Part shown: piece by piece, positions 5,774 to 41,990 of the stretch
How the letters are laid out: every line of letters begins with the position of its first letter
How positions within the stretch are numbered: the first letter of the stretch is position 1
Virus record (IMG/VR): IMGVR_UViG_3300019458_000020
Span: 62,001 to 126,000 of that record
DNA length: 64,000 bases
Reading direction: 5' to 3' (one strand)
Program-made: the position numbers and the translations under genes
Notes under the pieces: model-generated
Databases searched by the model: none
What the model was told of the DNA's origin: nothing
Seen by the model: only the letters and a program-made list of their open reading frames with translations

Positions 5774-5803
5774 ATTATTTAATGATTTTTAAAAGTTCTT
5801 TTA

Positions 5804-6283: not shown

Positions 6284-6286
6284 AAA

Positions 6287-8412: not shown

Positions 8413-8468
8413 CCACAAATAAGTAGTTTATCCCAATCAGTCATAATATTTATTTTTATACTTAAAAT

Positions 8469-10649
8469 ATGCGCTACGAGCTTTCCCAATTAAATGATTT
8501 AGACGACGAGGTAAGAGAAAAGTTGTCGGCTCTTAGTTTAGATACAGGAATGATGAATTCTATAGCGTCGGAACCAACCATTGAACATCGACCAGTTAGT
8601 GTGGCATATACCGAAGCCGGAGAACCTATAGGATGGGCGACGATATTAGAAACTGGACTCAAAACAATTGGTGCAGAAAGAAGAAAATCAGCATATATCG
8701 GAGTTTACGTTCATCAAGATTATCGAAGATTAGGTGTAGGAACAAAATTGGTCAAAGAATTATTTAAATTATTAAAACGAGAATATGAATATATAGTTGT
8801 TTCTCCACATGACGAAAAAAGCCATCACTTCTTTAAAAATCACGACATCGACAGTTGGGAAGACCGCTCAAAATATTTTGATACAGGAAATTACAAACAA
8901 GGATTAATTAAATTAAAAGAAATTATCTATGAATCCAAAGAAAGCTTCTTTGTTTTAGGTAGAGTTTCGGAGGATGGTGAGGTTGACAAATACGAATTTC
9001 GTGACACAATTACAGACGTACACCCGAGTTCTTGGCGTTCCTCTCATTATAAACTGTGGAGATACTGGAATGTCACTAAAATAGTGTATTGGTGGGAATC
9101 TCCAACCGATGTAGAGAAAGAGGGTGTAGAGTATTTCTTGGGTAGAAAAGGGTACGATATTCAAGGAAATAAATACATGATTCACATGACGCCGGATTTT
9201 AACAAATTATCAGGACATAAGGTTATGGAAACTAAATTGAATGAAGGAAAAAAAGAGAAAGCAGCAGAAGATTTCATTAGGAATATTATTAAAGGAACCG
9301 AATGGGAAGGAAAAGTCTTTATTGCTGGTGGATATGTCCGTGATGAATTTATGGGTAAAGATCCAAAGGATTTAGACCTTCTCGTAAATGCACCTAACGG
9401 CGGAATTGAATTTGCAAATTGGATAACCAAGAAAATTGGTGCCCATTCTGACGGCAATCCGGTTACATTCCCCCGATTCGGAACAGCCAAATTCAATCTC
9501 CGTGGAGTAATCCACGATGGTATTGATTTGAGTGGAATGGATATCGAAGCTGTAATGCCAAGAAAAGAACAATATACCGCTGGAAGTAGAAAACCTGATG
9601 TCACCGGTGGAGATTTAAAAGATGATGTTGAAAGACGAGATTTTACTGTTAATTCGCTATTAAAGGATTTAAGTAGTGGAGAAATTTTGGATTTAACTGG
9701 AATGGGTAAAGATGATATTCGTAAGGGAATTGTTAGAACTCCATTAAATCCAGATAAAATTTTTACTGATGATCCTCTTCGAATGTTAAGAGCTGTACGG
9801 TTTGCAATGAAATATAAATGGAAACTTCCGATGTTTATGTTACGTGGATTGAAGAAAAACGCGGAACAACTTAAAAACATTTCTCAAGAAAGAATCAGAG
9901 ATGAATTGGATAAAATGTTAATGACATCGAATCCACATGGAGCCATCAAATTGATGAAAGTAGTAGGATTACTAAAATACGTTATTCCAGAACTACAAGC
10001 TGCAATCAAAATGACTCAGAACGTTCATCATAAAGATGACGTATTCGACCATATTCTTGATGTTCTATCGAAATCGAATCCCGTATTGGTTCAACGATTA
10101 ATGGCCTTATTTCACGATATTGGAAAGACGGTTACAAAGAGTGTAACACCAACAGGTGTTCATTTTTATGGTCATGAGATGGCCGGTGCAGATATGGTTG
10201 AAACCATCATGACACGATTAAAATATCCTAGAGAATTAATTGATGCAGTAAAACTTGGTGTAAGAAACCACATGAGATTAAAATCAGCTGGTGATACAGG
10301 TGTTAATATTTCCGACAAAGCACTTAGAAAGTTTAAGACAGAAATCGGTGACGAACTTGAAAACGTATTAAGTGTTATTCATGCAGATAATATTGCACAC
10401 GCCGATGCATCATCAATGCCTAATCAGATTAATAATCTAAAAAAGAGATTAGATAATCTAAACATGAATGTTTCTGCTCAAGGAAAACCAAAACTTCCTA
10501 TTAGTGGAAAAGACTTACAAGATATAGGTCTAAAACCAGGACCAATATATAGTGAAATTATGAAGGCAGTCACGGAATCTTGGTTCGAAAATCCAAATAT
10601 AACTAAAGAACAAGCTATTCAAATTGCTAAGTCGATGGCAGGAATATGA
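8469..10649 (+). CDS. cca: GNAT + unknown domain + CCA-adding tRNA nucleotidyltransferase with HD domain (fusion or polyprotein)
   Basis: GNAT motif A VHQDYRRLGVGTKL; class II NTase motifs IAGGYVRD, KDLD, ERRDFTVN, DDPLRMLRAVRF, SQERIRDEL; HD domain DVFDH...LFHDIGK. Confidence 0.85.
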   Translation: MRYELSQLNDLDDEVREKLSALSLDTGMMNSIASEPTIEHRPVSVAYTEAGEPIGWATILETGLKTIGAERRKSAYIGVYVHQDYRRLGVGTKLVKELFKLLKREYEYIVVSPHDEKSHHFFKNHDIDSWEDRSKYFDTGNYKQGLIKLKEIIYESKESFFVLGRVSEDGEVDKYEFRDTITDVHPSSWRSSHYKLWRYWNVTKIVYWWESPTDVEKEGVEYFLGRKGYDIQGNKYMIHMTPDFNKLSGHKVMETKLNEGKKEKAAEDFIRNIIKGTEWEGKVFIAGGYVRDEFMGKDPKDLDLLVNAPNGGIEFANWITKKIGAHSDGNPVTFPRFGTAKFNLRGVIHDGIDLSGMDIEAVMPRKEQYTAGSRKPDVTGGDLKDDVERRDFTVNSLLKDLSSGEILDLTGMGKDDIRKGIVRTPLNPDKIFTDDPLRMLRAVRFAMKYKWKLPMFMLRGLKKNAEQLKNISQERIRDELDKMLMTSNPHGAIKLMKVVGLLKYVIPELQAAIKMTQNVHHKDDVFDHILDVLSKSNPVLVQRLMALFHDIGKTVTKSVTPTGVHFYGHEMAGADMVETIMTRLKYPRELIDAVKLGVRNHMRLKSAGDTGVNISDKALRKFKTEIGDELENVLSVIHADNIAHADASSMPNQINNLKKRLDNLNMNVSAQGKPKLPISGKDLQDIGLKPGPIYSEIMKAVTESWFENPNITKEQAIQIAKSMAGI

Positions 10650-11359
10650 TAAAATTAAAATCTCTCATAAAAGAAGACACAGCATCATGGAAAGATATAA
10701 CCATAGATGATGTCGAAAGTTTATTGTCTTCAAGATGGGTAGATAGAGATTATTCATCTACGTTACGAACCATACAGGATTTTTATTACGATGATGATAA
10801 AAGTAAACAACAACTCATTGTGGAATACTTTGAGTTATTAAATTCGGTGGCTAAATTAGTAATTTCATTGACAAGAAATATTCCACATGTAGATGATAAA
10901 TATATAAAAAGATATCTCTTATCTCAGAATGAATTTCATACATCTCCAGAAGAATTTTTTCCTTTTCCTGTATATGTTTCGGCAACTCCTGGTGACGAAG
11001 ATACTATAGGTATAATGATTGATAAGAATGGAAAAGTATTAGAAATACATGAGGGCAACGATGAATCTTCCTCGGAAACAATCAATATGGTAAATAGAAT
11101 GGTCAATCCTTCCGGAAAAAAAGTAAGGATATATGGGTCACACGATACCAGACTTATTCACGATATTGATGAAAAGGGATACCTACCAAAAAATTTGTAT
11201 GTTTCTCCGGATAAAAATCATGCATCAGGGCATTTGGATTTAAAAGGAGAACGGTCGATGTTTTCGGGAATAATAGATATTAACGGAGTGAGTCAAGAAA
11301 GTGATTTGGATTGGAGAACAATGGATAAAATTAAAATTGAAAAGTTTAGATGGATATGA
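10646..11359 (+). CDS. MIKLK-leader protein; C-terminus possibly a degenerate ADP-ribosyltransferase fold
   Basis: MIKLKSLIKE; RIYGSHD...IDEKGYLP..LYVSPD resembles the ART H/G-G-Y/S strand pattern. Confidence 0.5.
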   Translation: MIKLKSLIKEDTASWKDITIDDVESLLSSRWVDRDYSSTLRTIQDFYYDDDKSKQQLIVEYFELLNSVAKLVISLTRNIPHVDDKYIKRYLLSQNEFHTSPEEFFPFPVYVSATPGDEDTIGIMIDKNGKVLEIHEGNDESSSETINMVNRMVNPSGKKVRIYGSHDTRLIHDIDEKGYLPKNLYVSPDKNHASGHLDLKGERSMFSGIIDINGVSQESDLDWRTMDKIKIEKFRWI

Positions 11360-12558
11360 TTAAGTTAAAAAACATTATACAAGAGGTTCACGAATATCAA
11401 CTCGGAGATGTAATAGTCGGATATATTGATGAAGATGGACACATTATTGCATCAGACAAAGTGAAGGGTCATTCGGTATTATTAGATAAACATCCTTCTT
11501 GGGGGTCGAGAAGAACATATCCTTGGAGATTTAATAAAATCATAAATACTTTGTTCTTTTGGTTTGATAACACACCTGAAAGTATAAAAGAAATGGTTGT
11601 AGATTACTTAAATACAAAAAAATTCAAAGTTAAATCTATTACAACAATTGATGATTTTTGGAGCGATGATCCAAGAAGAAAAAGGTCACTATATCATTCT
11701 CATGGTGGGTCCGGAACATTTGACATTTATAAAGATTTTGCAGAAGAAAATATAAAAGAGGCACCAATTGATACATTTCAAACGATAGGTGATTTTTCAA
11801 AGGGGTCATCTTTTACAAGTAAAGCAGATAGAGCATTGGTTACACATCCTGTAGCAGTGCAAAAAGTAAAAGATTTCTTTAAAAACACTACGGCTAATTT
11901 TGATTTTTATTTCGTTAATACTAAGGATGCAAGAAAATTTACCGAAGTTGGTGAAGTTAAGGAAGACTTCATTTATAAAGACCTTAAAATTCAACCATCT
12001 CAACTAAAAGATGGTAAGATAAATAAAGACAACATAACTGTATTTTTTACCAATAATAAGGGTGCCGAGCGTGCTCCACTAACGCCTTGGATAATGGGCC
12101 ATAGATTTGGTCATGTTGTAAGAAATCTATATTCGTGGAAAGAAGAACTCTCTCCTTGGGTAGAAAGACTATCAGAATATATTCTTGAAGATTATGGAAT
12201 CAAAAAAACTCACAAATGGCATAGCCGGGGGTCTTCAGTAAATAGAGAATATCAAATAGCCATGAGACATCTTTATGAAACCATAGGAACATTCAAAAGT
12301 GCCAGAGATAAAAATCTAAGAGATTATTTTGAATTTCATTATGAATTATTTACGCAGTATTTGAAAGATGGTTCGATAAAATTTAATTCTCTTCCTGATG
12401 TATTGATTGTGGGTCACGGATCATACGGTTCTAAAAAACAAAGACGGCTTTTGAATAGAGAATCAGCCGAAGAAAACTTAGATGAATTGTCTCGTGATTA
12501 TCATTATTATGCCGAAAATGTTTTAAGTGATTGTGTCGGGAAAATTTTTGTCATGTAA
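11356..12558 (+). CDS. MIKLK-leader two-domain hypothetical protein
   Basis: MIKLKNIIQE (ATGA overlap with upstream stop); N-terminal domain paralogous to the middle domain of the CCA ORF; internal IKE/APID junction; HRFGH motif. Confidence 0.6.
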   Translation: MIKLKNIIQEVHEYQLGDVIVGYIDEDGHIIASDKVKGHSVLLDKHPSWGSRRTYPWRFNKIINTLFFWFDNTPESIKEMVVDYLNTKKFKVKSITTIDDFWSDDPRRKRSLYHSHGGSGTFDIYKDFAEENIKEAPIDTFQTIGDFSKGSSFTSKADRALVTHPVAVQKVKDFFKNTTANFDFYFVNTKDARKFTEVGEVKEDFIYKDLKIQPSQLKDGKINKDNITVFFTNNKGAERAPLTPWIMGHRFGHVVRNLYSWKEELSPWVERLSEYILEDYGIKKTHKWHSRGSSVNREYQIAMRHLYETIGTFKSARDKNLRDYFEFHYELFTQYLKDGSIKFNSLPDVLIVGHGSYGSKKQRRLLNRESAEENLDELSRDYHYYAENVLSDCVGKIFVM

Positions 12559-12898
12559 TGAAACCAAAGTATGCAAAAACTAAGTGGGGAAGAATACAAT
12601 TTGGATACCACGAAGACACTGAAACCAGTAATTCGGTAAATGAAGGATGGGTTGTTGATAAAGTTACTGCACACTTAGAATGTTGAACCACCTTTTAGGA
12701 GTGGTGGAGTAGGTTTTGGTTTATATATTGCCGGAGCAAAGTGGAGGGCCGAACGGGGATGGTGTTACACGCATCGTCTCTTCAAAGCACTGAAGCAAAA
12801 AATCTTGGGATAGAATGAAAAGGTTGGGATTGCCGGTAAAAGAATATACGCCAAAATTGGATGTAAAAAAAATATGTCCGGATTATAGAGGAAAATAA
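12558..12898 (+). pseudogene. frameshifted GNAT acetyltransferase remnant
   Basis: Segments in successive frames join into a GNAT: MKPKYAKT...VTAHL / NVEPPFRSGGVGFGLY / GMVLHASSLQSTEAKNL / WDRMKRLGLPV...RGK*. Confidence 0.6.
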
Positions 12899-12900
12899 GT

Positions 12901-13305
12901 ATGATTAAACTTAAAACATTAATAACCAAAGACATCAAAAAGAGATATTCTGGAATTGAATTGGACAGTGAATCTCACGATCGATTGAAAGAGAAATTTG
13001 CGAAATACATTCCCGAAGGGTGGAAGGTTATTGCCCATCACATGACCATAGACCCGTCCAAAACTTTACCTGAAGAAGAGATTGGAAAAGAAGCAAAATT
13101 AAAGGTGACTCATATAGGAAAGAATGATAAAGCCATGGCCGTAAAAGTTTCAGGTTATGAAGGTAAAACCAATAACAAGTTTCCTCATGTTACATTGGCT
13201 GTTAATGATAAGGCCGGCGGAAAACCAAAAGATTCCAACGAAATAACGGAGTGGGATGATGTAAAAGAAGATATTTATCTTACGGGTATTATAAATAATC
13301 TATGA
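12901..13305 (+). CDS. 2H phosphoesterase (RNA-repair / cyclic phosphodiesterase type) with MIKLK leader
   Basis: Two HxT motifs: AHHMTID and FPHVTLAVN. Confidence 0.75.
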   Translation: MIKLKTLITKDIKKRYSGIELDSESHDRLKEKFAKYIPEGWKVIAHHMTIDPSKTLPEEEIGKEAKLKVTHIGKNDKAMAVKVSGYEGKTNNKFPHVTLAVNDKAGGKPKDSNEITEWDDVKEDIYLTGIINNL

Positions 13306-13595
13306 TTAAACTAAATCATATAATAAATGAGGATAAACGACTATATCGTGGAGATTGTCGAACGATATTAGGTCAAGATGACTTATTTAATGATGCTACT
13401 CAAATGTCTGGTGCTATAGAAAATAGTGATAAAATAGACTATCATACTTTTGGGAATGAAGCCAATTTAACAGGTGCCCCAAGAATGTTTAAATTGAGAC
13501 TCCGAAGAAATACCGATAAATTTGATTTTGGAAAATATAAAGATTTGGTTTGGGCATACGATACAGAAACAGATATTCATTATTTCTTTTTATGA
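13302..13595 (+). CDS. MIKL-leader hypothetical protein
   Basis: MIKLNHIINE; ATGA overlaps on both sides. Confidence 0.6.
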   Translation: MIKLNHIINEDKRLYRGDCRTILGQDDLFNDATQMSGAIENSDKIDYHTFGNEANLTGAPRMFKLRLRRNTDKFDFGKYKDLVWAYDTETDIHYFFL

Positions 13596-14512
13596 TAAAA
13601 TTGTCAACATTATTAGAAGAAATAGAACAAGAAAAGGTCATTGCTGACAAAGTAAAACAATTGGAAGCAGACTTGGAAGCCCAATTTCCGCAAATTCAAG
13701 ACTTGCATTTATTTATTAAATCCAATGGTTCACTTTATATTCAATCGATTCGGATTAAACCAGAAGAAAGAAGAAAAGGAATAGGAAGTCAAATTATAGA
13801 TAAAATTAAAAAATTTGCTGACGGCCATAACTTAACTATTTCTCTAGCTCCTGAACCGGAGCCAAGATATAAAGAAAAACTTCACAAATTTTATAAGAGA
13901 CATGGATTCATTTTTAATAAAGGAAGACATAAAGATTGGCAATTATCAGAACCATTTTCATCTACAATGTATCGAAGACCCCAAAAGGAAGCTATGGATA
14001 CCTCTACTGTAATATCTTCACCAATGATACAACAATCGTTTGATCGTTCTTTCCTGAATTACATGAAAAATGTGGAAAATGGAATTCTTAAAGGATATGA
14101 TAGGAGTAAAAATCTGTGGTTTCCACACGAGTCTTATGAAGGCGGGCTTCCAACAATAGGGTATGGCCATAAGATAAAAACCAAAAACGAATTAAATAGA
14201 ATGAATCGTGGAGTAACCGATTCAGAAATAAATAGGATGTTGACACAAGATTTGGAAACTGCTAAAAAATCTGTCGAAGACTATATTGAAAAAAGATATA
14301 AAGTAAAGCTAATGTTGGAAAAAAATCAACAAGAAATGTTAGTTGATTTTGCATTCCATTTAGGTAGTCTTGATAAGTTCCCTGAATTTACTGAGGCTGT
14401 ATTAAAAAAAGATTGGAATACAGTAAAAAAAGAATATAAACGGCATGCTCGTGGAAAAGAGTTGACTGGTAGAAATGACTCGTTTTACCAACGATACCTT
14501 AAAAATTTATGA
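13592..14512 (+). CDS. GNAT + phage lysozyme (GH24-like) fusion with MIKL leader
   Basis: Likely start ATG 13592 (MIKLSTLLEE); IKPEERRKGIGSQII, KFYKRHGF (GNAT); KNVENG, PTIGYGHK, MLVDFAFHLG (lysozyme). Confidence 0.75.
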   Translation: MIKLSTLLEEIEQEKVIADKVKQLEADLEAQFPQIQDLHLFIKSNGSLYIQSIRIKPEERRKGIGSQIIDKIKKFADGHNLTISLAPEPEPRYKEKLHKFYKRHGFIFNKGRHKDWQLSEPFSSTMYRRPQKEAMDTSTVISSPMIQQSFDRSFLNYMKNVENGILKGYDRSKNLWFPHESYEGGLPTIGYGHKIKTKNELNRMNRGVTDSEINRMLTQDLETAKKSVEDYIEKRYKVKLMLEKNQQEMLVDFAFHLGSLDKFPEFTEAVLKKDWNTVKKEYKRHARGKELTGRNDSFYQRYLKNL

Positions 14513-15045
14513 TACACATTGCAAAATTAGTAACCGAAAAACGAAGTGAATCTTCCATAGATAAAGGATGTTTAATGGCTGATGTATCTCCTGAAATTTG
14601 TAAAAAGTTGGTAGAATTCGGGAAGAAAATTATTCCCGAATCCGATTTATATGTAGAGGGAGACGAGTTTGGAAGAGAATTAGAATGTCATATAACCGTT
14701 TTGTATGGTTTTACTAGAAACCTGACCGAATTAGAAGTTCGTAGAATAATAAACGGTGTAAAACCATTTACTATTAAACTTTCCGGTCTTAGTAAGTTTA
14801 CTCCACCTGAAAAATTTGAAGTAGTAAAGTTTGATGTAGAAAGTGAAATTCTTACTTCCTTAAATAAAAAATGTCAAGAACTTCCTTTTGAAAGTGATTT
14901 TCCAGATTATCATCCCCACTTGACTATAGCATACGTAAAAAAGGGAAAATTCAATCACACCAAAGAAGGATTATCTATAGAAATACCAATTAATAGATTT
15001 ACATATTCAACCGCCACAAAAGAAAAAACCTACTATAATTTATGA
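14509..15045 (+). CDS. 2H phosphoesterase, T4 gp57B/Acb1-like (putative anti-CBASS nuclease)
   Basis: GCLMA, GRELECHITVLYG and DYHPHLTIAYVKKG; leader MIHIAKLVTE. Confidence 0.75.
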   Translation: MIHIAKLVTEKRSESSIDKGCLMADVSPEICKKLVEFGKKIIPESDLYVEGDEFGRELECHITVLYGFTRNLTELEVRRIINGVKPFTIKLSGLSKFTPPEKFEVVKFDVESEILTSLNKKCQELPFESDFPDYHPHLTIAYVKKGKFNHTKEGLSIEIPINRFTYSTATKEKTYYNL

Positions 15046-15452
15046 TACTACTAAAAAATATAGTAGAAGATATTGAAGGCCCAATACCAGACGTGTTGTA
15101 TCATGCAACATTTAACGCATTAATTCCGTCTATATACAAAAAAGGAATAGTACCGTGTGGAGTAAAATATCAGAATTTTGAAGGATGTGAACGTGGTGTT
15201 TACATTTCCGATGATTACGGGTTTGCTGGAAGTATGATTGAAGGTGGGTCGGAAAATGAAGATATACCAGATGAGTGGTTCGATGAAATCGTAGTAATTA
15301 TTATAGACCCACAGAAAATTGATATGTCTAAATTAGAAAAAGACCCACATATTAATTTATCTGCCACGGAGGATGAAATAATTCCAAGGTCGTTTATTTA
15401 TAGGGGAATCATACCGTCGAATTCGTTTATTGAAGTCGTTGATTATCGTTAA
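15042..15452 (+). CDS. ADP-ribosyltransferase-fold protein (Tpt1/KptA-like) with leader
   Basis: LYHATF...SIYKKGIVP...GVYISDD...FIYRGIIP; leader MILLKNIVE. Confidence 0.65.
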   Translation: MILLKNIVEDIEGPIPDVLYHATFNALIPSIYKKGIVPCGVKYQNFEGCERGVYISDDYGFAGSMIEGGSENEDIPDEWFDEIVVIIIDPQKIDMSKLEKDPHINLSATEDEIIPRSFIYRGIIPSNSFIEVVDYR

Positions 15453-17348: not shown

Positions 17349-17380
17349 AGATATTTAACTAAAGAGAATAGAATACAAAT

Positions 17381-21932: not shown

Positions 21933-22595
21933 TTACTTGAAATGAAGTTTTTCTTCATTCGCTCTATACCACTCCCATACATTTCGTAACACTTCGGAAT
22001 CATTGTATGATTCTATCAATTTAATTACATCATATTCGTCAGCGATTTTTCCTTGTGAAATACCATCCATTATTATTTCGGCTATAACTTCTTCTTCCAA
22101 CCTTGGAGTAAAATTAATGGGATCAACAATGGGTGCTTGGCTACCTATCTTTCCTTCACCGGATTTGTTTATAAAAGATTTAACTCTAGGATTTTCCAAA
22201 GCTTCCTTGAAGGCTTCTGTCCAAGACCGCATAATTAAATTTCCACATTCCGTGACCCGTTTTGGTTCCTTATGAAGTTTTCTGGCCGCCGATACCCAAG
22301 CTCTCTTAGCAGATTCCGTTCGTTTACGAATTCTTTCGTGATAAATACGAGTAGTGTCATTTGGTTTTCGTAACCCCTTTGTTCTAATAGTCGCCCAATA
22401 ATTTACTGGTTTTTCTGTTTCGGTTATGGTAACAGAACAATAAGATTCTCCGACATTATGATGATTGTTTCCAGCATAAGCAAACCAATCATTTCCTTCT
22501 GTCACTCCGTTCCAAGGAACTAATTCGTGGTCACCAGAAGTCAACGACCCTGGAACACTGAATTCATTCAATAGAATTAGAGTTTTTAATTTCAT
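21933..22595 (-). CDS. MKLK-leader hypothetical protein containing an MCP-like DPINFTPR motif
   Basis: Likely start 22595 (MKLKTLILLNE), 3 nt after TATTTATA. Confidence 0.6.
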   Translation of the reverse strand: MKLKTLILLNEFSVPGSLTSGDHELVPWNGVTEGNDWFAYAGNNHHNVGESYCSVTITETEKPVNYWATIRTKGLRKPNDTTRIYHERIRKRTESAKRAWVSAARKLHKEPKRVTECGNLIMRSWTEAFKEALENPRVKSFINKSGEGKIGSQAPIVDPINFTPRLEEEVIAEIIMDGISQGKIADEYDVIKLIESYNDSEVLRNVWEWYRANEEKLHFK

Positions 22596-22616
22596 GTCTA
22601 TAAATATCAATTCGTC

Positions 22617-23006
22617 TTACCTTCCCTCAAACAATTCAACTTCAACATTATCGGTATCGTTAAATAATCCTTTTGCTTCAGACTCTATCGCCAAATTTTT
22701 GATTTCTCTAGCTTGTTTATTGCTAGGCAATTTACCACTATAATAATCAAAATGTAATATTGAGTCTCTATAATAATTGAAAGTTATTCTTATCCACCCT
22801 CTTTTTAATAATACTTGTCCTGGACTTTCTTCATTATCTATCGTCCAGTGTATATTTGATTTTTTAAGATAATCTCTTGCCCAATTAAAATGTCCATATT
22901 GAGGATTATCCGTATAAACTTGATGAAGCTTTCCGTCCGGATCCATCCACCAAGCTTTAAAAAACTGACCCCAAGTTTCTACAACTATGTTTTTTAGCTT
23001 TATCAT
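22617..23006 (-). CDS. MIKLK-leader hypothetical protein
   Basis: MIKLKNIVVE; WWMDPDG...GH...LLKRGWIRI. Confidence 0.6.
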   Translation of the reverse strand: MIKLKNIVVETWGQFFKAWWMDPDGKLHQVYTDNPQYGHFNWARDYLKKSNIHWTIDNEESPGQVLLKRGWIRITFNYYRDSILHFDYYSGKLPSNKQAREIKNLAIESEAKGLFNDTDNVEVELFEGR

Positions 23007-25108
23007 CAGTCAAAATACTCCACATTAAATGTAGGAGTTTTAGTTAATGCGTCTAAAGACTCCGAAATTCTCTGTTTACTGCTATTATCTATTTTCGTTT
23101 TTAGATAATCCTTTAATGCTATAAGATGTTTACACATTCCGGGAATTTCTCTAGGATTTCTAACGGCCGGTCTTCTGTTGATACATTTGTTTAGACTATT
23201 ATTTCCTATCTGACTGGCATCTTGTTTTGCATCGGCATAAGCAAACCTATATTTAAAATCCGGACAACTACAATCGACCTGACAATCTATATCGGCTGCA
23301 TTATCGGTTGTAGATTCTTTAAAGAATTTTATATTTCCCTGATGAGGATTTCCCGTTCGGCTGGGATTTGATTTATATCGGAAGTTCCAACTTTCTTTGT
23401 TATTTTCCGTTGATACAGGCAAACTTCTTGCTCTTACTGTTTTTGCTCGATTTTTTCTTCCATCCTCACTGGAACGAAGAAGGTCATTATAAGACATTCT
23501 TTCTGTAACAGTTTCTTCTTTTTGTAAAGAAGATTCTGCAACATTTCTTCCTAACAAATTCTTTAATTGAATAACGGGCATATTCAATTTATCAGCAACG
23601 ACCGCCAATTTATTCACCGGAAGTTTTAAAATTTTATGTTTTAATTCTGGGTTCAAATGTAATTGTTGAAGGATTCGTAGTTCTTCATCGGAAGTAGTTT
23701 GTTCTTTATCTACTCCAGTTTTAAAGATTTGGTCATAAGTGAAAAATTCTCCATTATGACCACCGACTTCATATAATATTTCTCTCGGGTTAATTCTTGC
23801 GTGTTTTAGTAAAGCGAACAAATCACGTCTATGAAGTTCAATCATTGATAATTTTTCCCAACACGACATTATTAATTGACCACGAACATTAAATACTCTT
23901 CCGTGTATTAATCTTCTCGACTTTATCGGAGGATAATTTGTATAAAAAGTAAATCCCAAGAGGTTTTCTATGTAACCGAGAATATTTCCGTGAGTAGTTA
24001 AATAATCATCAAGAGAAGGAGGGTCATTGTCTAATATTTCTTGATACGTTTTATTATTTGTAATGATTTTACTACGTTCTGGAATGTAACCAAAATAGGT
24101 ATTACGACCTTCGATGTCTGCTAATATAAACACCATTTCTACTTGGTCGCTGTTTTCCCAAATATCAATTGTTACACCATCAAATTCAAATCCATCAGGG
24201 TCTTCGGTTAAACTCTTTTTGACTGGTTTAAAAACCAAAATTTGTTTATCTCTACGAAGTTTTGCAGCAGCAAGTCTATGTCCACCGTCTATAATAGAAC
24301 CCTGATCGTCAATTACAATCGGAGGAAATTGTTTGTCGGATTGTGATAAAGATTGAACTTTAGTATCACTTATTGACCATTCACTATCTTCAATGGAATT
24401 AGGGTCAACAGCAATTAATTGAAAATTACCATCAACTCTATCATCATCTTCAAATTCATCATGTTGAGAGTGTATATAATTCAAAACATCACCATCCTGA
24501 TAAACACCATTCAATTTAAATTTTTTCCAATCAGGTTCACCACGAACAGAATACCCTCCTTTATTCATCATTGGGTAATCTATTTTTTCTACTTCGTTAA
24601 TTTCATCGTCATCAATGATTTCTCCATCCCATTCTCCATGATATATACCTTCGGATAATTCTTTGGTTAATTCTCTCCAATGACCTGTTTTTTCATTAAA
24701 CCATGTATCACCGTTAGAATCATAACGAGTTTTGGTGTCTTCATTATAAACAAAAATTTCTATTGGAACGGTTATTTCGGATTCACTATAAAAATCTCCT
24801 GATGATTGTTGGTCCGGAGTCAAAAGATTAATGTCATATTTAATTCTTAAAATAGGACGATATCTATTTGGATGGTTATTTCTCCATAAAATATTTCCGT
24901 AATAATTTGCAGAACGAAATTTAGAAGCAAGGAATATCTTTCCAAAACTCCATTTACCCAACTCTCCACCCCAATTTGTTTCTTCAGATGGTTGTAGCCC
25001 ATTTTTTTGAATAGAAGGAAGGCGGTCAGCCAATGTGGCATGATAAAAATAATGAATATTTTTATTTTCTTCCAGTATTTCATTAAGAATAGAGGACAAT
25101 TTAATCAT
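23006..25108 (-). CDS. multidomain leader protein: ART-like + ParB/Srx-like + unknown + SWIM Zn finger
   Basis: Likely start 25108 (MIKLSSILNE); FYHATL..IQKNGLQP..KIFLA; FPPIVID..IIDGGHRLAAA; VDCSCPDF...MCKHL. Confidence 0.7.
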   Translation of the reverse strand: MIKLSSILNEILEENKNIHYFYHATLADRLPSIQKNGLQPSEETNWGGELGKWSFGKIFLASKFRSANYYGNILWRNNHPNRYRPILRIKYDINLLTPDQQSSGDFYSESEITVPIEIFVYNEDTKTRYDSNGDTWFNEKTGHWRELTKELSEGIYHGEWDGEIIDDDEINEVEKIDYPMMNKGGYSVRGEPDWKKFKLNGVYQDGDVLNYIHSQHDEFEDDDRVDGNFQLIAVDPNSIEDSEWSISDTKVQSLSQSDKQFPPIVIDDQGSIIDGGHRLAAAKLRRDKQILVFKPVKKSLTEDPDGFEFDGVTIDIWENSDQVEMVFILADIEGRNTYFGYIPERSKIITNNKTYQEILDNDPPSLDDYLTTHGNILGYIENLLGFTFYTNYPPIKSRRLIHGRVFNVRGQLIMSCWEKLSMIELHRRDLFALLKHARINPREILYEVGGHNGEFFTYDQIFKTGVDKEQTTSDEELRILQQLHLNPELKHKILKLPVNKLAVVADKLNMPVIQLKNLLGRNVAESSLQKEETVTERMSYNDLLRSSEDGRKNRAKTVRARSLPVSTENNKESWNFRYKSNPSRTGNPHQGNIKFFKESTTDNAADIDCQVDCSCPDFKYRFAYADAKQDASQIGNNSLNKCINRRPAVRNPREIPGMCKHLIALKDYLKTKIDNSSKQRISESLDALTKTPTFNVEYFD

Positions 25109-26058: not shown

Positions 26059-26064
26059 ATGAAG

Positions 26065-26679: not shown

Positions 26680-28395
26680 TTAGACTTGGTCCAAATCAGC
26701 AATCAACACACGGCCATAAAATTCCGGCCTTACCATCTTCTTGGCATAACGTGTCATTACGCCCCGGCGGGGAGTAAAGTTCACCGGGTCATAGACCAAC
26801 GGCGTTTGCACCAATGGAATATAAGGAGCGTAAACAGCACCAGTTTCGAGGAAGTTATTTCCACGGAAACCGACGAGGATTACGTTATCCGTCATGTATG
26901 GGTTCTTGTAAACTTGGAATCGGGACGCGAACGTTCCGACACGGCTTACACCCATTGCGAACTTGGCTTGGTCGCCATCCGTGCTGACCACGTATCCAGG
27001 GATGGATTCGAGAATCGTAGCAACGTCTGGGGAACAAACGAGGAAGTTAGCACCACCACGAAGAGTCAATTGGTGAATCCTGTTGGATACCTTTTGAATC
27101 TTGTTACCGAGGGTTTGATACCAAGTTGACTTGGTGTAGTAACCACCGGTTCCAGCAGTCGTTTGATCAACAGCTTGGAAGGTACCACCGACACGAACGA
27201 TTTCACGGTTGAGGCGTGCGCTCCAACGTTCAGTCGTTACAGCTGGTGCATTCGTCAATAGCATGTCGAGGATTTCGAGGTCGATTTCCATCGAGACGTA
27301 TTCAGACAATAATGCAGTCAATTCTGCTTCTGCGTCGATGCTGTGGTAAGCATTCAAGTCTTGAGCGAGCTCAGGGGTCCAAGCAGCTTTCAACTTACGA
27401 GTCTTAGCAACGATAGGTTCGCTCTTGAGTTCGAGGTTGACTTCAGGAATACCGATGTCTTTGTTAAGACCAGTATCCGTAGCAGTCGTCGAAGCACCAA
27501 GATTGTCTTCAAAGTCGCCACGAGCATTATCACGAGGTTGTACCGAGTAGGTGATAGCAAGACCACCGACTGAACCTGTCGTTGAGAATGGGTTCGTTGT
27601 GGTCGAGGCCGATACAACGAATACAACTTCCGAACCGTTAACTTTCGTCAAGGCTGGGAACCAGGTTCCAATGCTTGAACCAGAAACGGTGAACGAGCGA
27701 ACACCGTTAAGATCGATTGGATTACCAGCAGCCAACGATGCCGAGTAAAGGTTTGTGGTAGTAATCTTGTAAAGATGACCAGCAGCCAACGATGCCGAAA
27801 TGACTACCATTTCAGGTGAGGCGTTACCAGTATTCCAGTTGATATCTTCGGCCGAAGCAGAAGCTACCGTGCTGGAGACGCTAGGAGCACCCTTGTCGTT
27901 GATAGAATATCCGAAGCGACCAGCGCCATAAAGACCGCCGGTTGCCGAATCAGTAGAACCGAGCTTGGTGCCCGTACCACCGAACAACGAAGAATAGACA
28001 GAACCACCGAGCGAGCCCGTGGTATCTCTCTGGAACAAACCTTGGGTCGTACCATACTTGAAGTCCAAGTAGAATACCAATCCGGAAGGAAGGTTCATAG
28101 GTTGAACGGAGACGAACTCCTTAGCAGCGAATTCTGCGAATACACGACGAACGAGTGGGAGAGCTACGCCTGCCCATTGTTCGCTGTTTGCCGAAGTACC
28201 AGTGTTGGTAACTTCATCAATGAGTTGCTTTGCTTGGTTTTCAAGCAAAACAGCCATGTTCGACTTTTCAATGTCGTTTTTCAATCCATCGAGAAGACCG
28301 GTTTTGTCCCAACGGGTCACAAGACCACGGGTTTCTTGCATCAGTCTAGCTTGTGGATTGAGAGTATTGGTTAACAGTTGTTTAACGTTTTCCAT
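26680..28395 (-). CDS. gp23: major capsid protein (T4 gp23 family)
   Basis: LLENQ, LPLVRRVF, VSVQPMNLPSGLVFYLDF, AKTRKLKAAWTPELAQDLNAYHSIDAEAEL, VYAPYIPL, FTPRRGVMTRY. Confidence 0.97.
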   Translation of the reverse strand: MENVKQLLTNTLNPQARLMQETRGLVTRWDKTGLLDGLKNDIEKSNMAVLLENQAKQLIDEVTNTGTSANSEQWAGVALPLVRRVFAEFAAKEFVSVQPMNLPSGLVFYLDFKYGTTQGLFQRDTTGSLGGSVYSSLFGGTGTKLGSTDSATGGLYGAGRFGYSINDKGAPSVSSTVASASAEDINWNTGNASPEMVVISASLAAGHLYKITTTNLYSASLAAGNPIDLNGVRSFTVSGSSIGTWFPALTKVNGSEVVFVVSASTTTNPFSTTGSVGGLAITYSVQPRDNARGDFEDNLGASTTATDTGLNKDIGIPEVNLELKSEPIVAKTRKLKAAWTPELAQDLNAYHSIDAEAELTALLSEYVSMEIDLEILDMLLTNAPAVTTERWSARLNREIVRVGGTFQAVDQTTAGTGGYYTKSTWYQTLGNKIQKVSNRIHQLTLRGGANFLVCSPDVATILESIPGYVVSTDGDQAKFAMGVSRVGTFASRFQVYKNPYMTDNVILVGFRGNNFLETGAVYAPYIPLVQTPLVYDPVNFTPRRGVMTRYAKKMVRPEFYGRVLIADLDQV

Positions 28396-28435
28396 ATTTT
28401 TATCTCTTTTCTCTTTCAGTTAGTTATACTCGCTA

Positions 28436-29815
28436 TTACTTTTTTGGTGGCTGAGTCTTGATTCCTGCGAGTTTCTTGAATCGAGATGCCATGTCTGCTC
28501 CTTCCGAAAGAATTTCTTTCGATGGAGCGGTTGACGCCACCGGCTTGGATGCAAGTCCTTCGGTGATCTTAGCGACTTGAGCAGGAGCTTTCACTACTGG
28601 CTTCTTGTCTGCTGCCTTAGGGGCAGTTTTTGCACCGAAACTTAGGGACTCAGCCAAAACGGCATAAGCCAATTTCACTTCACGAACAGTCTTCGTAAGG
28701 TCAAAGTGTTCTACGATCTTCATTCTCATTTCACGATCGAGAGAGCCTGCGTATTCTTTAAATAGCTTGTTCGTGTAAAGCAATTTAGCATTCAACAGGT
28801 TGACCTCATTAATTTGTCCTTGTAGGAATTCAACGGTGTCGCTGTGTTCCTTTAAGGATGCCTTGAGTTGAGCATTTTCGTTTTTCAACGTTTCAACTTC
28901 GTGCATCTTGTGGGTACCGTCCAAGTCAGAGCCGCCGTGATTCTTATCACCGACTTTGGCCTTGGCCATGTCTGCGGAATCTTTAGCTTGTCCTTTATCT
29001 GGAGCTGGCATACCTTCCTTAGCACCTTCCGACATATCTTCCTTATCCTTTTTGTCATCCTTCTTCTCTTCATCCTTGTCGTCTTTCTTGTCTTTTTTGA
29101 GCCAAGGTGGGAGCTTTCCTTCGGTGACTTCCTCTTCAACTTCGTTCAACGAAGCGATGAGTTCTTCAAGGTTAATATCTTCTTCTCCTTCTGGTGCTGG
29201 AGCATCTGCTGGAGGCATTTCTCCGACAGGTGGGGCAACAGGAGGCATTTGAGCTGGTGGAACGTCTCCTGCAACAGGAGGCATTACTGGTGCGGGTGCT
29301 GGGCATCCACAATCACCGGCTGCTGGTGGAATTACTGGAGCAGGGGCTGCAGCGACATCAGGAACAGGTTCTCCTTCAGCATCATCAGCAACTTCGGCTT
29401 CTAATTCTGCAATAATTTTATTTAAATCTTCAGAAGTAAGTCCAGCTTCTTCAACATTTTCATCAACTGGGACTTCTTCGGTTTCACATACAGGCTGGCT
29501 AAGCTTTCCAACTCCGTCTGGACCAACACCAGCTTGAACTGGCTTCATTGGGGTTCCGCTGCTCATCTTCTTTGGTTGTCCCTTTGAGACATCCTTGGTT
29601 GATACGGCTTTGGATACGTTATGGGGAGCTTCAACTTCAGCAACTGGTTCAGCTGCTTCCTGTTGTTCTTCTGCTTCTTCCTTTAGTTTATCAGCAAACA
29701 TTGCGTGAAAACGAGGAGCGAAGGCTTCTTCGAGAGCAATCTTAGCATTGGCGAGAGCAGTGGCTCTTATTGCCTTTGCATCAGCAATTGCTTCTTTCAA
29801 CATATCGCTTGTCAT
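28436..29815 (-). CDS. prohead core scaffolding protein (gp22-like)
   Basis: Directly upstream of MCP; acidic, Pro/Ala-rich; LKEAIADAKA, INEVNLLNAKLLYTNKLF, C-terminal RFKKLAGI; likely start 29815. Confidence 0.75.
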   Translation of the reverse strand: MTSDMLKEAIADAKAIRATALANAKIALEEAFAPRFHAMFADKLKEEAEEQQEAAEPVAEVEAPHNVSKAVSTKDVSKGQPKKMSSGTPMKPVQAGVGPDGVGKLSQPVCETEEVPVDENVEEAGLTSEDLNKIIAELEAEVADDAEGEPVPDVAAAPAPVIPPAAGDCGCPAPAPVMPPVAGDVPPAQMPPVAPPVGEMPPADAPAPEGEEDINLEELIASLNEVEEEVTEGKLPPWLKKDKKDDKDEEKKDDKKDKEDMSEGAKEGMPAPDKGQAKDSADMAKAKVGDKNHGGSDLDGTHKMHEVETLKNENAQLKASLKEHSDTVEFLQGQINEVNLLNAKLLYTNKLFKEYAGSLDREMRMKIVEHFDLTKTVREVKLAYAVLAESLSFGAKTAPKAADKKPVVKAPAQVAKITEGLASKPVASTAPSKEILSEGADMASRFKKLAGIKTQPPKK

Positions 29816-30026
29816 AATAGTTATAGGTTTCCTATGGGTTTCTGAAGTCATTAAAAAACTTCAATGAAGTCTATCGTAAATCGATTAGCCATTCAGCTAA
29901 ATCGTTAGGCGGCAAATGGGGTTGCTGCATTTCTATTAGATAAATAGTGCGAAAAATCAAAAAATACAAAAAATCTTTATAAAATCAAAACATACTTATA
30001 GTATGGATGTAATTTTTTAATCTATT

Positions 30027-41380: not shown

Positions 41381-41990
41381 GAATGTCTCGAATGATGGTT
41401 TCGGTCTTTTCCCATTTTCCGGTTATAGGATTCTTAACTTGACTGACTCCTTCATTCAGACTTCCTTCTGGATACAGAAATGCACCACGAGTAGATGGAT
41501 TAGAAACGAAATCAAAAGCAATAAGTTCAAAATCAGGTTGAACTACATCCACATCTTCAGACATGTTTTTCTTAACCGTTCCAAGTCCACGACTGGAAAT
41601 ACCTAATCTAATATTTGAACGGAAGAGTTCTTTTAAGATGTTTCCATTGGGTGTAGGTAATACTTCTACAGTTCCAACCAAATCATCATTTTCCCAATGC
41701 ATTTCAACAATGTTATGAGAAACGTTTTGAAGATTGACAACGGAAGATTCTGGATGGTCTAATTCTCCTAATGCTCTACGTTCTTTAATAAAATTCTCTT
41801 CATATTTTCCTGCTTCACGAAGAAGAATTTCACGAGTATAAACACGACCGTTTTGATTTTTCTTTCCGGCACGTTGTAGAACACCTTTGACGATCAATCT
41901 TCGGTTCATGTCGCCTGCGGCTTGTTCAAAGAGGGTATCTCTTACGAAATCGAATGGGATACAATCTACTAATAGTCTCTTATCATTCAT
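41364..41990 (-). CDS. gp21: prohead protease (T4 gp21 family)
   Basis: KGVLQRA..KNQNGRVY, ALGELDHP, NVSH, TPNGNIL, GISSRGLG, FDFVSNPSTRGA. Confidence 0.95.
   Translation of the reverse strand: MNDKRLLVDCIPFDFVRDTLFEQAAGDMNRRLIVKGVLQRAGKKNQNGRVYTREILLREAGKYEENFIKERRALGELDHPESSVVNLQNVSHNIVEMHWENDDLVGTVEVLPTPNGNILKELFRSNIRLGISSRGLGTVKKNMSEDVDVVQPDFELIAFDFVSNPSTRGAFLYPEGSLNEGVSQVKNPITGKWEKTETIIRDILGNME

What the first reader, a model, noticed from the sequence alone, without database searches (positions are those of the whole stretch)
8469..15452. Leader-tagged operon that reads as an injected tRNA-repair and anti-defence kit
Seen: a translationally coupled (ATGA overlaps) plus-strand operon, divergent from the neck genes and preceded by TATTTAT (8447-8453). 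It encodes a CCA-adding enzyme with HD domain, two different 2H phosphoesterases, a Tpt1/ART-fold protein, two intact GNAT domains plus a GNAT pseudogene, and a lysozyme; nearly all carry the leader. Established: CCA enzymes with HD domains repair damaged tRNA 3' ends; 2H enzymes open 2',3'-cyclic phosphates; T4 Acb1 (57B) is a 2H enzyme that destroys CBASS cyclic nucleotides. Inference: a pre-packaged kit that counters tRNA-cleaving nucleases and nucleotide-signal immunity before phage genes are expressed. A virion-delivered CCA enzyme would be unusual.
Basis: partly seen in the sequence, partly recalled or inferred. Interest (0 to 1): 0.8.

Follow-up and report, generated by a model that had tools for sequence, protein, structure and literature searches.

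The report
Capsid-targeting leader on phage enzyme cassettes
A giant T4-like phage from a cave metagenome puts the same ten-residue tag, most likely a signal for loading into the phage head, on a row of unrelated enzymes that include RNA-end repair modules, so its probable injected proteins can be read from the DNA sequence.

Summary
The operon is real. It has eight intact plus-strand genes and six ATGA overlaps. It encodes a GNAT-CCA-HD protein, two 2H phosphoesterases, a GNAT-lysozyme, two ART-fold proteins and two unknowns.

Seven of the eight genes begin with M-I-K-L-K-x-(L/I)-(I/L)-x-E. Four more tagged genes lie elsewhere in the window. Null sequences give 0 to 0.3.

The window is a distant T4-like phage on a contig of about 341 kb, with a gp23-type capsid protein and a gp21-type (S77) prohead protease. 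The tag matches the T4 capsid targeting sequence in length, in its hydrophobic positions and in the terminal L/I-x-E cleavage motif. The same tag heads at least 105 unrelated cargo families in related uncultured phages. Orthologous cargo carries different, genome-specific tags in other lineages.

The best reading is a head-internal protein locus like T4 IPI-III and Alt, but loaded with enzymes.

- The CCA gene is the one gene without an N-terminal tag; it has an internal tag behind a fused GNAT domain. Relatives do tag CCA directly.
- Natural fusions of 2H, ART-fold and CCA modules favour RNA 3'-end repair over an Acb1-type role.
- The GNAT pseudogene and the TATTTAT promoter are not supported.

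Packaging and injection remain untested.

The parts
8469..10649 (+). 726-aa fusion protein with no N-terminal leader. Its parts are GNAT (about residues 40-125), an internal leader copy L-IKLKEIIYE (residues 146-155, 8904-8933), an 'X' domain (about 156-250), a decayed leader METKLNE (residues 253-259, 9225-9245), a CCA-type nucleotidyltransferase head (283-423), an RNA-binding domain (461-512) and an HD domain (543-607).
   Evidence: Pfam and PHROG hits. DNA shows Leu=TTA at the internal leader. The X domain resembles the N-terminus of the 11356 product at E 2e-7. Relatives carry leader+CCA, leader+X+CCA or GNAT+CCA. The best NCBIfam match is TIGR02692 at 8e-71, below the equivalog cutoff.
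10646..11359 (+). 237-aa leader-tagged protein (MIKLKSLIKE). The C-terminal ~100 residues have an ADP-ribosyltransferase-like fold.
   Evidence: 63 homologs, most with a leader. AF2 pLDDT is 91.9. Foldseek finds the TreTu Rhs ART toxin (prob 1.0, rmsd 2.3 A over ~100 columns, E 0.03), PARP16/14 and CC0527.
11356..12558 (+). 400-aa leader-tagged protein (MIKLKNIIQE): an X-like N-domain plus a conserved ~270-aa core of unknown function. The invariant residues are H249, R250, H253, R317, E326, E330 and Q334.
   Evidence: 151 homologs with no Pfam family. Lineage-specific leaders all end in L/I-x-E directly before the conserved APID motif. AF2 pLDDT is 89.4. No PDB fold match has E below 0.01.
12558..12900 (+). 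343-nt stretch with no long ORF. It holds three short pieces in three frames (12558-12683, 12679-12810, 12794-12895).
   Evidence: The pieces give no Pfam hit and no hit to a local GNAT HMM. There is no Rfam match. The stretch is identical in two assemblies.
12901..13305 (+). 134-aa leader-tagged 2H phosphoesterase. Its leader MIKLKTLITK-D is the one copy without Glu10.
   Evidence: tRNA_lig_CPD at 24.7 bits, cutoff 23. H-x-T motifs at residues 47 and 96. Tagged homologs in L103 and L070.
13302..13595 (+). 97-aa leader-tagged protein (MIKLNHIINE) of unknown function.
   Evidence: No family, structural or feature match.
13592..14512 (+). 306-aa leader-tagged (MIKLSTLLEE) GNAT plus phage-lysozyme fusion. 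The true start is the ATG at 13592, not the TTG at 13550.
   Evidence: Pfam Acetyltransf_7 at 33.9 bits and Phage_lysozyme at 43.7 bits. Matches a segment of a 3925-position PHROG profile. Tagged relatives carry lysozyme alone or GNAT alone.
14509..15045 (+). 178-aa leader-tagged (MIHIAKLVTE) 2H phosphoesterase, LigT/ThpR-like or Acb1-like.
   Evidence: 2_5_RNA_ligase2 at 41.8 bits, Acb1 at 29.9 bits and LigT_PEase. TIGR02258 at 2e-8, below cutoff. PDB Acb1 7t26 at E 0.025. Fused to CCA in P0194, P0198 and P0249.
15042..15452 (+). 136-aa leader-tagged (MILLKNIVE) ART-superfamily fold protein with a YHAT motif.
   Evidence: Atlas structural and feature neighbours are Arr, PARP, DUF3990, Tpt1/KptA (TM 0.56), DarT and DUF952. 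PF01885 scores only E 0.089. Fused to CCA in P0184 and P0198.
41364..41990 (-). gp21-family prohead serine protease (S77), the predicted processing enzyme for the leader.
   Evidence: Peptidase_S77 at 1.8e-22. Aligns to T4 gp21 (5jbl) at E 4e-11, with the GELDHP His and SRGLG Ser regions conserved.
41987..42997 (-). 336-aa leader-tagged (MIRLKNLIKIQE) protein directly upstream of the protease, in the position of the T4 prohead-core genes 67/68.
   Evidence: Weak homologs sit in the same position in L096, L099 and L102.
21933..25108 (-). Second array of tagged genes: a 700-aa protein (23006-25108, MIKLSSILNE, with a YHAT ART-like N-terminus), a 129-aa protein (22617-23006, MIKLKNIVVE), and a third gene with a variant tag MKLKTLILLNE (21933-22595).
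49204..50160 (-). 318-aa leader-tagged (MIRLKSLLQE) PARP-type ADP-ribosyltransferase next to the terminase gene. It is an analog of T4 Alt.
   Evidence: PF00644 at 28.5 bits, cutoff 26.7. Tagged homolog in L024.
26680..29851 (-). gp23-type major capsid protein (26680-28395) and an acidic scaffold-like protein (28436-29851) with several L-x-E sites.
   Evidence: Pfam Gp23 at 1.3e-76. Aligns to T4 gp23* structures. N-termini listed.

Best explanation
The operon is a head-internal-protein locus of a jumbo, distant T4-like phage.

Each cassette begins with a ten-residue propeptide, M-I-K-L-K-x-(L/I)-(I/L)-x-E. I infer that this propeptide docks the protein onto the scaffolding core while the prohead assembles. 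I also infer that the phage's gp21-type serine protease removes it by cutting after Glu10. The mature enzymes would then stay in the DNA-filled head and enter the host with the DNA, before any phage gene is expressed.

The cargo here is enzymatic:
- a CCA-adding/HD enzyme;
- two 2',3'-cyclic phosphodiesterase-type 2H enzymes;
- two ART-fold proteins;
- a GNAT-lysozyme;
- two proteins of unknown function.

The 2H (14509), ART-fold (15042), X-domain and CCA modules are repeatedly fused in relatives. They therefore most likely act together on damaged RNA 3' ends, such as tRNA acceptor ends. The other ARTs and GNATs probably modify host macromolecules, as T4 Alt does.

The window's own CCA gene has acquired a GNAT domain upstream of its leader. 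Its packaging would therefore require the internal tag to work; otherwise it is not packaged.

Shown here: the sequence features, their distribution and the fusions. Inferred: targeting, cleavage, injection and substrates.
For: 1. The genome has a T4-type head module: gp23-type capsid protein, portal, large terminase, scaffold-like protein and an S77 protease with its catalytic regions conserved.
2. There are 11 tagged genes in the window against a null of 0-0.33. The tag is conserved as a peptide while the codons vary synonymously.
3. The T4 CTS is MKTYQEFIAE: 10 residues, removed by gp21, which cuts after L/I-X-E. The tag here is also 10 residues, is hydrophobic at positions 4, 7 and 8, and has Glu at position 10 in 97 of 102 cargo clusters.
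4. A degenerate DNA pattern for the tag retrieved 119 or more viral-contig stretches. They hold 178 tagged ORFs in 105 unrelated clusters, often in ATGA-coupled arrays, mostly from phages whose capsid protein and protease are 50-72% identical to the window's. In at least 8 relatives the array lies between the protease gene and the scaffold/capsid genes.
5. Orthologs of the 11356 core carry different tags in different lineages, always ending L/I-x-E just before the conserved core. Their neighbours share the local tag: L126, L129, L130 and the 735-kb phage LR756501 with MIxKFKLFE.
6. The cargo repertoire includes ART-PolyVal, PARP, NUDIX, Mom, SprT, GNAT and lysozyme. This matches proteins known or predicted to be head-packaged.
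7. In the AF2 models the tag is a detached, low-confidence N-terminal segment outside the fold.
8. Fusions exist that join tag+2H+CCA, tag+2H+ART+X+CCA and CCA+ART.
Against: - There is no proteomic, cleavage or injection evidence. No cultured phage holds homologs of the 10646 or 11356 products.
- The two nearest cultured relatives checked (Flavobacterium phage immuto, whole genome; Microcystis phage Mel-JY01, a 41.6-kb stretch around its capsid gene) show only one tag-like gene each.
- Similarity to the T4 CTS is pattern-level, not statistically testable homology.
- One tagged gene (12901) lacks Glu10.
- The CCA protein lacks an N-terminal tag. A second GNAT-CCA fusion without an N-terminal tag exists (P0185), so that architecture may be deliberately unpackaged.
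- Some 14509 homologs have no tag (L116, L117).
- No late-promoter motif could be tied to the operon.
- Mature cargo is mostly acidic or neutral, unlike the basic T4 internal proteins.
- Co-location with head genes is only moderately enriched, and it is partly an ascertainment effect.
Confidence: 0.65

Rival explanations
1. The tag does load the proteins into the prohead, but they are core or scaffold accessories. They act or are degraded inside the capsid, like T4 gp22, gp67 and gp68, and are not delivered to the host as active enzymes.
For: One tagged gene sits exactly where the T4 core genes 67/68 sit. T4 core proteins are also gp21 substrates and are largely expelled. The core-position protein is low-complexity and acidic.
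Against: Most tagged cargo consists of folded enzymes with intact catalytic motifs (CCA, 2H, ART, NUDIX, lysozyme) that have no substrate inside a capsid. T4 Alt and IPI-III set the precedent for ejection.
Confidence: 0.1
2. The shared N-terminus is not a capsid signal. It could be a translation-initiation or cassette-recombination feature, or a different sorting or turnover signal. The operon would then encode ordinary cytoplasmic enzymes made after infection, for example to mature or repair phage and host tRNAs, as in other jumbo phages.
For: The start region is AT-rich. CCA-adding enzymes and RlaP are common unpackaged RNA-repair genes of jumbo phages. The window's CCA gene and some 2H homologs lack the tag. 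The operon has no recognisable late promoter.
Against: Codons vary while the peptide, the hydrophobic pattern and the position of Glu10 are kept. Other lineages use a different peptide with the same L/I-x-E end on orthologous cargo. The tag is confined to phages with the S77 head module, and in many relatives it lies inside that module. It is too short and too charged for a Sec-type signal.
Confidence: 0.15
3. One reading: the two 2H enzymes are Acb1-like degraders of cyclic-oligonucleotide immune signals (CBASS and similar), delivered pre-made.
For: The 14509 product passes the Pfam Acb1 gathering score (29.9 against 27). Its best PDB sequence matches are Acb1 chains (E 0.025 and 0.34) around the second H-x-T motif.
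Against: The sibling family 2_5_RNA_ligase2 scores higher (41.8 bits), and ThpR/LigT TIGR02258 also hits. This domain is fused to CCA enzymes in P0194, P0198 and P0249, which points to RNA ends. The best match of the 12901 product is the tRNA-ligase CPDase domain.
Confidence: 0.15

Closest known systems
T4 internal proteins IPI, IPII, IPIII and Alt, with the capsid targeting sequence (CTS) processed by gp21
   Same: Otherwise unrelated proteins share a ~10-residue N-terminal propeptide ending in L/I-x-E. The genome has a gp21-family protease and a gp23/gp20/gp22-type head. One tagged cargo is an ADP-ribosyltransferase, like Alt. The loci are variable hotspots.
   Different: The peptide differs (MIKLKxLIxE against MKTYQEFIAE). 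The cargo is mostly enzymes of 14-80 kDa, acidic or neutral, whereas IPI-III are small, basic inhibitors of GmrSD. The repertoire is far larger, at 105 or more clusters. The host clade is uncultured jumbo and mega phages. Nothing is verified experimentally.
Polyvalent proteins of phages and conjugative elements (Iyer et al. 2017) and predicted head-packaged ART, NUDIX and NADAR proteins (Iyer et al. 2022)
   Same: The domain vocabulary is the same: ART-PolyVal, GNAT, lysozyme, SprT/MPTase, NUDIX and deaminase. So is the predicted delivery with the DNA. Some relatives fuse the same modules into proteins of 855 to 2659 aa.
   Different: Here the modules are mostly separate, translationally coupled genes, each with its own tag. 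Fusion appears to be a secondary event, since internal tag copies remain at the junctions in the window's CCA gene and in P0198.
Phage RNA-repair systems: T4 Pnkp/Rnl1 against PrrC, and jumbo-phage CCA-adding, RlaP and RtcB genes
   Same: The genome has a CCA-adding/HD enzyme, 2H cyclic phosphodiesterases and an RlaP gene (34541-35662). Related loci add RtcB, RNA ligase and PTH2.
   Different: The operon has no ligase or kinase. The modules point to 3'-end healing rather than anticodon-loop resealing. The predicted delivery as pre-made virion proteins has not been described for these enzymes in the papers searched.
T4 Acb1 (gene 57B), a 2H anti-CBASS nuclease
   Same: It has the 2H fold with two H-x-T motifs. 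The 14509 product passes the Pfam Acb1 threshold.
   Different: The product scores higher to the LigT-type families and is fused to CCA enzymes in relatives. Acb1 is not known to carry a CTS.
phiKZ, 201phi2-1 and SPN3US inner-body and ejection proteins, processed by a gp21-like protease after Glu
   Same: These are giant phages in which many head proteins are cleaved after a short motif ending in Glu.
   Different: Those phages lack a single shared N-terminal decapeptide. Their head is not of the gp23 type at the sequence level.

Membership tests
T4-type CTS / internal-protein system | Genome encodes a gp21-family (S77) prohead protease and a gp23-type head | tested here: met
   Peptidase_S77 at 1.8e-22. 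Aligns to T4 gp21 5jbl at 4e-11 with the His and Ser regions conserved. Pfam Gp23 at 1.3e-76.
T4-type CTS / internal-protein system | A ~10-residue N-terminal propeptide is shared by otherwise unrelated proteins | tested here: met
   11 genes in the window. 178 ORFs in 105 clusters in relatives. Columns 1-5 and 10 of the alignment are nearly invariant.
T4-type CTS / internal-protein system | The propeptide ends in the gp21 cleavage motif L/I-X-E | tested here: met
   10 of the 11 window copies fit, allowing V in the L/I position. The exception is 12901, which ends ...LITK-D. Glu10 is present in 97 of 102 clusters.
T4-type CTS / internal-protein system | Sequence homology of the tag to the T4 CTS (MKTYQEFIAE) | tested here: inconclusive
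   The length, the hydrophobic positions 4, 7 and 8, and Glu10 are the same. The peptide is too short for a statistical test.
T4-type CTS / internal-protein system | The proteins are present in virions, with the propeptide removed, and are ejected into the host | not testable with these tools
   The phage is uncultured and only metagenome contigs exist.
Class II CCA-adding tRNA nucleotidyltransferase with HD domain | PolyA_pol head with the GGxVRD, DxD and RRD motifs, an RNA-binding domain and an HD domain | tested here: met
   Pfam scores of 68.7, 57.5 and 29.4 bits. The motifs lie at residues 287, 301 and 389.
Class II CCA-adding tRNA nucleotidyltransferase with HD domain | Equivalog-level match that would separate CCA-adding from A-adding or poly(A) polymerase activity | tested here: not met
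   The best match, TIGR02692, scores 239 bits against a cutoff of 438.8. Specificity is undetermined.
2H phosphoesterase superfamily | Two H-x-T/S motifs and a family score above threshold | tested here: met
   12901: HMTI and HVTL, tRNA_lig_CPD at 24.7 bits against 23. 14509: HITV and HLTI, 2_5_RNA_ligase2 at 41.8 bits against 27.
Acb1 (anti-CBASS 2H nuclease) | Acb1 is the best-scoring family, and the protein cleaves cyclic oligonucleotides | tested here: inconclusive
   PF23474 scores 29.9 bits against 27, but this is below the sibling family. PDB Acb1 matches at E 0.025. Fusions to CCA argue for RNA ends. Activity is not testable.
Tpt1/KptA RNA 2'-phosphotransferase | Full-length match to PF01885, covering both the RNA lobe and the NAD lobe | tested here: not met
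   The 15042 product scores 13.3 bits against a cutoff of 26. Only profile positions 96-128 are matched, and the protein is 136 aa. The structural TM score to the Tpt1 cluster is 0.56.
ADP-ribosyltransferase superfamily (fold level) | The predicted structure matches ART-fold proteins | tested here: met
   15042: the Atlas neighbours are Arr, PARP, DUF3990, DarT and DUF952. 10646: Foldseek finds TreTu, PARP16 and CC0527. 49204: Pfam PARP at 28.5 bits. These rest on models, not solved structures.
GNAT acetyltransferase | Pfam GNAT score above threshold | tested here: met
   8469 N-terminus at 44.1 bits. 13592 N-terminus at 33.9 and 30 bits.
GNAT acetyltransferase (the claimed pseudogene at 12558-12900) | Detectable similarity of the ORF pieces to GNAT | tested here: not met
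   No Pfam hit at E 0.05 or better. No hit above noise with a local GNAT HMM.

The most novel reading that the evidence does not exclude
Virions of this phage clade carry a ready-made RNA 3'-end repair pathway. A 2H cyclic phosphodiesterase opens the 2',3'-cyclic phosphate left by a host tRNA nuclease. An NAD-using ART-fold enzyme or the HD domain clears the remaining phosphate. The CCA enzyme then rebuilds the acceptor end. The modules are loaded either as separately tagged proteins or as tagged polyproteins. In the polyproteins, the prohead protease would cut at the retained internal tag copies into individual enzymes inside the head. On this reading the tag lets the whole injected proteome of a large uncultured phage clade be read from sequence.
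Probability: 0.3. Interest if true: 0.8.

Novelty: new variant of a known kind. Interest (0 to 1): 0.64.

Why it matters
T4's capsid targeting sequence is the textbook way a phage loads proteins into its head. So far it has been tied to a handful of small anti-restriction proteins and to Alt.

If this tag is its counterpart, three things follow:
1. A large clade of uncultured jumbo and mega phages uses the same device to deliver dozens of enzyme families. Their injected, first-minute effectors could be listed by a simple N-terminal motif search.
2. tRNA and RNA-end repair would join anti-restriction and RNA-polymerase modification as functions a phage brings with it rather than makes on arrival.
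3. The tag and its protease would be a candidate system for loading foreign proteins into non-E. coli phage capsids.

Tried and rejected
1. Promoters. TATTTAT occurs 26+24 times in the window. Its reverse complement (ATAAATA) faces the minus-strand HNH gene. The T4 late motif TATAAATA is slightly enriched upstream of genes (4 of 18 against about 1 expected) but is absent from the operon's leader region. The sigma-70 and terminator scans were at shuffle level.
2. GNAT pseudogene. The three pieces were searched apart against Pfam and against a local GNAT HMM, and nothing was found. Only a motif-A-like 'RSGGVGFG' can be seen by eye.
3. Function of the 11356 core. The AF2 model is confident but has no PDB fold match. 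The Atlas gave only viral hypotheticals and a weak metalloprotease lead at 0.87.
4. The 13302 product gave nothing in any library.
5. Cultured relatives with proteomics. There are no homologs of the 10646 or 11356 products in 50,697 phage records. Immuto and Mel-JY01 show one tag-like gene each.
6. Megablast of the operon against phages gave no match.
7. Rfam gave no match and there are no tRNA genes in the window.
8. Sequencing runs. Only two DNA contig sets from a cave metagenome exist, with no RNA, so there is no expression data.
9. Internal tag copies at fusion junctions are rare. Apart from the window's CCA gene, only P0198 has one among 150 CCA representatives, so the polyprotein-cleavage idea rests on two cases.
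10. Literature. No paper in the library holds 'MIKLK' in a phage context, and none describes a virion-borne CCA enzyme.

Full report
**What is there**

The stretch 8469-15452 holds eight intact plus-strand genes and one 343-nt gap (12558-12900). Six start/stop junctions are ATGA overlaps, at 10646, 11356, 13302, 13592, 14509 and 15042. Two gene starts should be moved to the ATG that opens the shared leader: 11356 rather than 11350, and 13592 rather than 13550. The row is divergent from a minus-strand HNH endonuclease (7450-8418) and a neck/adaptor-like gene (6287-7456). Two independent metagenome assemblies reproduce 8400-14399 with no differences or indels at 16-20x depth, so the frame structure is not an assembly slip.

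**Domain calls**

| Gene | Product | Main evidence |
|---|---|---|
| 8469 | GNAT + PolyA_pol head + RNA-binding domain + HD | GGYVRD, DLD and RRD motifs. Best NCBIfam model is CCA tRNA nucleotidyltransferase at 8e-71, below the equivalog cutoff, so CCA versus A-adding specificity is open |
| 10646 | C-terminal domain with ART fold | Confident AF2 model. Foldseek finds TreTu, PARP16/14 and CC0527 |
| 11356 | Unknown | Confident AF2 model with no PDB fold match; function remains unknown |
| 12901 | 2H phosphoesterase | Two H-x-T motifs. Best Pfam match is the tRNA-ligase CPDase domain |
| 13302 | Unknown | No match in any library |
| 13592 | GNAT + phage lysozyme | |
| 14509 | 2H phosphoesterase | Two H-x-T motifs. 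Best match is 2_5_RNA_ligase2; it also passes the Acb1 threshold |
| 15042 | ART-superfamily fold | Atlas structure and feature neighbours. Tpt1 family score is far below threshold |

The claimed GNAT pseudogene could not be verified.

**The leader**

- Seven of the eight genes start with M-I-K-L-K-x-(L/I)-(I/L)-x-E.
- The same tag opens four more genes in the window: 41987-42997, just upstream of the prohead protease; 23006-25108; 22617-23006; and 49204-50160, a PARP-type ART.
- Second-order Markov nulls give 0 (strict pattern) to 0.33 (broad pattern) such ORFs.
- The peptide is conserved while the codons differ.
- The exception is the CCA gene. Its N-terminus is a GNAT domain with no tag. 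Residues 146-155 are an intact tag copy with Leu (TTA) in place of Met. Residues 253-259 are a decayed copy directly before the CCA domain.
- Between the two copies lies an 'X' domain that also follows the tag of the 11356 product.
- The gene is therefore a fusion of three former cassettes.

**What the phage is**

- The window has a gp23-type capsid protein, a portal, a large terminase, a scaffold-like protein and a gp21-family S77 protease. The protease aligns to T4 gp21 with its catalytic His and Ser regions conserved.
- The nearest cultured relatives are Microcystis phage Mel-JY01 and Flavobacterium phage immuto, at about 55% capsid identity.
- The genes lie on a contig of up to 340,916 bp from a cave metagenome.

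**Why the leader is most likely a capsid targeting sequence**

1. In T4, the first ten residues of IPIII (MKTYQEFIAE) target proteins to the prohead core. gp21 removes them by cutting after L/I-X-E.
2. The tag here also has ten residues. It is hydrophobic at positions 4, 7 and 8 and has Glu at position 10 in 97 of 102 cargo clusters.
4. Those stretches hold 178 tagged ORFs in 105 unrelated clusters, often as ATGA-coupled arrays.
5. Most come from phages with the same head module. In at least eight of them the array lies between the protease gene and the scaffold/capsid genes. The co-location statistics are only moderately above expectation and are partly an ascertainment effect.
6. Pfam on 80 representatives found ART-PolyVal, NUDIX, Mom, SprT-like, DnaJ, zeta-toxin-type kinase, NT5C, OmpA, GNAT, lysozyme, 2H and CCA. 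This vocabulary matches proteins known or predicted to be delivered with phage DNA.
7. The strongest test is co-variation.
   - Orthologs of the 11356 core carry different N-terminal peptides in different lineages: MIKLKDILNE, MTTLKEILLKE, MKIQTLLNE, and the T4-like MKKSFKQFLQE.
   - Each ends in L/I-x-E directly before the conserved core.
   - In each lineage the neighbouring genes share the local peptide (L126, L129, L130).
   - The 735-kb phage LR756501 has four adjacent MIxKFKLFE genes.
8. In the AF2 models the tag is a detached, low-confidence segment outside the fold.

**The CCA enzyme and the repair reading**

- CCA enzymes carry the local tag directly in L034, L119, L089, L082, L126 and L129, and in several 50%-cluster representatives.
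- P0188, which is 82% identical to the window's CCA part, is tag+X+CCA. That is the window's gene without the GNAT domain.
- P0185 is GNAT+CCA without an N-terminal tag, like the window.
- Other natural fusions are:
  - tag+2H(14509-type)+CCA (P0194);
  - tag+2H+ART(15042-type, YHGT)+internal tag+X+CCA (P0198);
  - CCA+ART (P0184);
  - a 2659-aa protein holding both 2H and CCA (P0249).
- Repeated fusion of these modules argues that they act on one substrate.
- The coherent chemistry is healing of an RNA 3' end that carries a 2',3'-cyclic phosphate, followed by CCA addition.
- From my own knowledge, not tested here: the HD domain of E. coli CCA enzyme has phosphatase and cyclic phosphodiesterase activity, and some Tpt1 enzymes remove terminal 2'- or 3'-phosphates with NAD+.
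- These fusions weaken, but do not exclude, an Acb1-type role for the 14509 product.
- Jumbo phages are already known to encode CCA-adding and RlaP repair enzymes. The window has RlaP at 34541-35662. Predicted delivery in the virion is the new element.

**What remains uncertain**

- Nothing shows that the proteins are in virions, are cleaved or are injected.
- The window's own CCA protein may not be packaged unless an internal tag can target it.
- Some homologs of the 14509 product lack the tag.
- No promoter could be assigned.
- The ART, GNAT and unknown cargo have no identified targets.

**Verdict**

It is wrong or unproven on several details. The system is a new variant of the T4 CTS/internal-protein device. 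In the papers searched I found no description of this tag or of a tagged CCA enzyme.

Noticed in passing
window 44420-47539 (-): The portal gene is 1039 aa. Relatives align to residues 9-104 and 445-1037. The inserted ~340 residues carry HNH endonuclease hits and intein-like junctions (...DYD|CVGPDT... and ...FVSN|T...). This is probably an intein with a homing endonuclease inside the portal gene.
   Followed up: partly
window 4564-5298, 7450-8418, 35650-36522, 38690-39388, 50766-51416: Five free-standing homing-endonuclease-type genes (GIY-YIG, HNH, NUMOD3/TnsA-like) are scattered among the structural genes.
   Followed up: no
window 18162 and 20228 (+): An identical 15-mer, ATTCTGGATAGTGAA, within a longer similar motif lies about 30 nt upstream of two paralogous genes (18191 and 20254). 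It may be a shared regulatory site.
   Followed up: no
window 16440-18148 (+): Two Ser-rich proteins with repeated 'SSW(A/S)xxS'-type units lie directly downstream of the operon. They are likely fibre or whisker proteins, and they have no database family.
   Followed up: no
window 53785-57009 (-): A single 1074-aa ORF combines a calcineurin-like phosphoesterase (Mre11-type) with an SMC/Rad50-type ATPase. It appears to be a fusion of the T4 gp47/gp46 pair.
   Followed up: no
window 32044-40301 (-): Between the protease and the scaffold/capsid genes lie metabolic and RNA or NAD-related genes: SPFH, NADAR (33358-33876), RlaP nucleotidyltransferase (34541-35662), DUF5662 and an IMPDH/GMP-reductase-like gene (39348-40301). 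Relatives keep tagged cassettes in this position.
   Followed up: partly
window 3907-4263, 4265-4591, 43000-43473 (-): Three small proteins share a different N-proximal motif, (I/L)IKEC(I/V)xEVL. This may be a second family of head-associated peptides.
   Followed up: no
window 26000-30000: GC content rises to about 45% over the capsid and scaffold genes, against about 34% elsewhere.
   Followed up: no
L131 (LR756501.1 146887-164266), ORF 5703-9404: The 735-kb uncultured phage encodes a 1233-aa tagged protein. It joins a cytidine/dCMP deaminase domain, repeated small domains linked by 'DPYGEEDWE' spacers, and a CCA-HD enzyme. Three genes with the same MIxKFKLFE tag precede it, one of them a GNAT.
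   Followed up: partly
window 5804-6283 (-), 30647-30946 (+): Further tag-like N-termini with small deviations (MKIYKLKDLIVE and MIKLMEIY...) suggest the count of 11 tagged genes is a lower bound.
   Followed up: no
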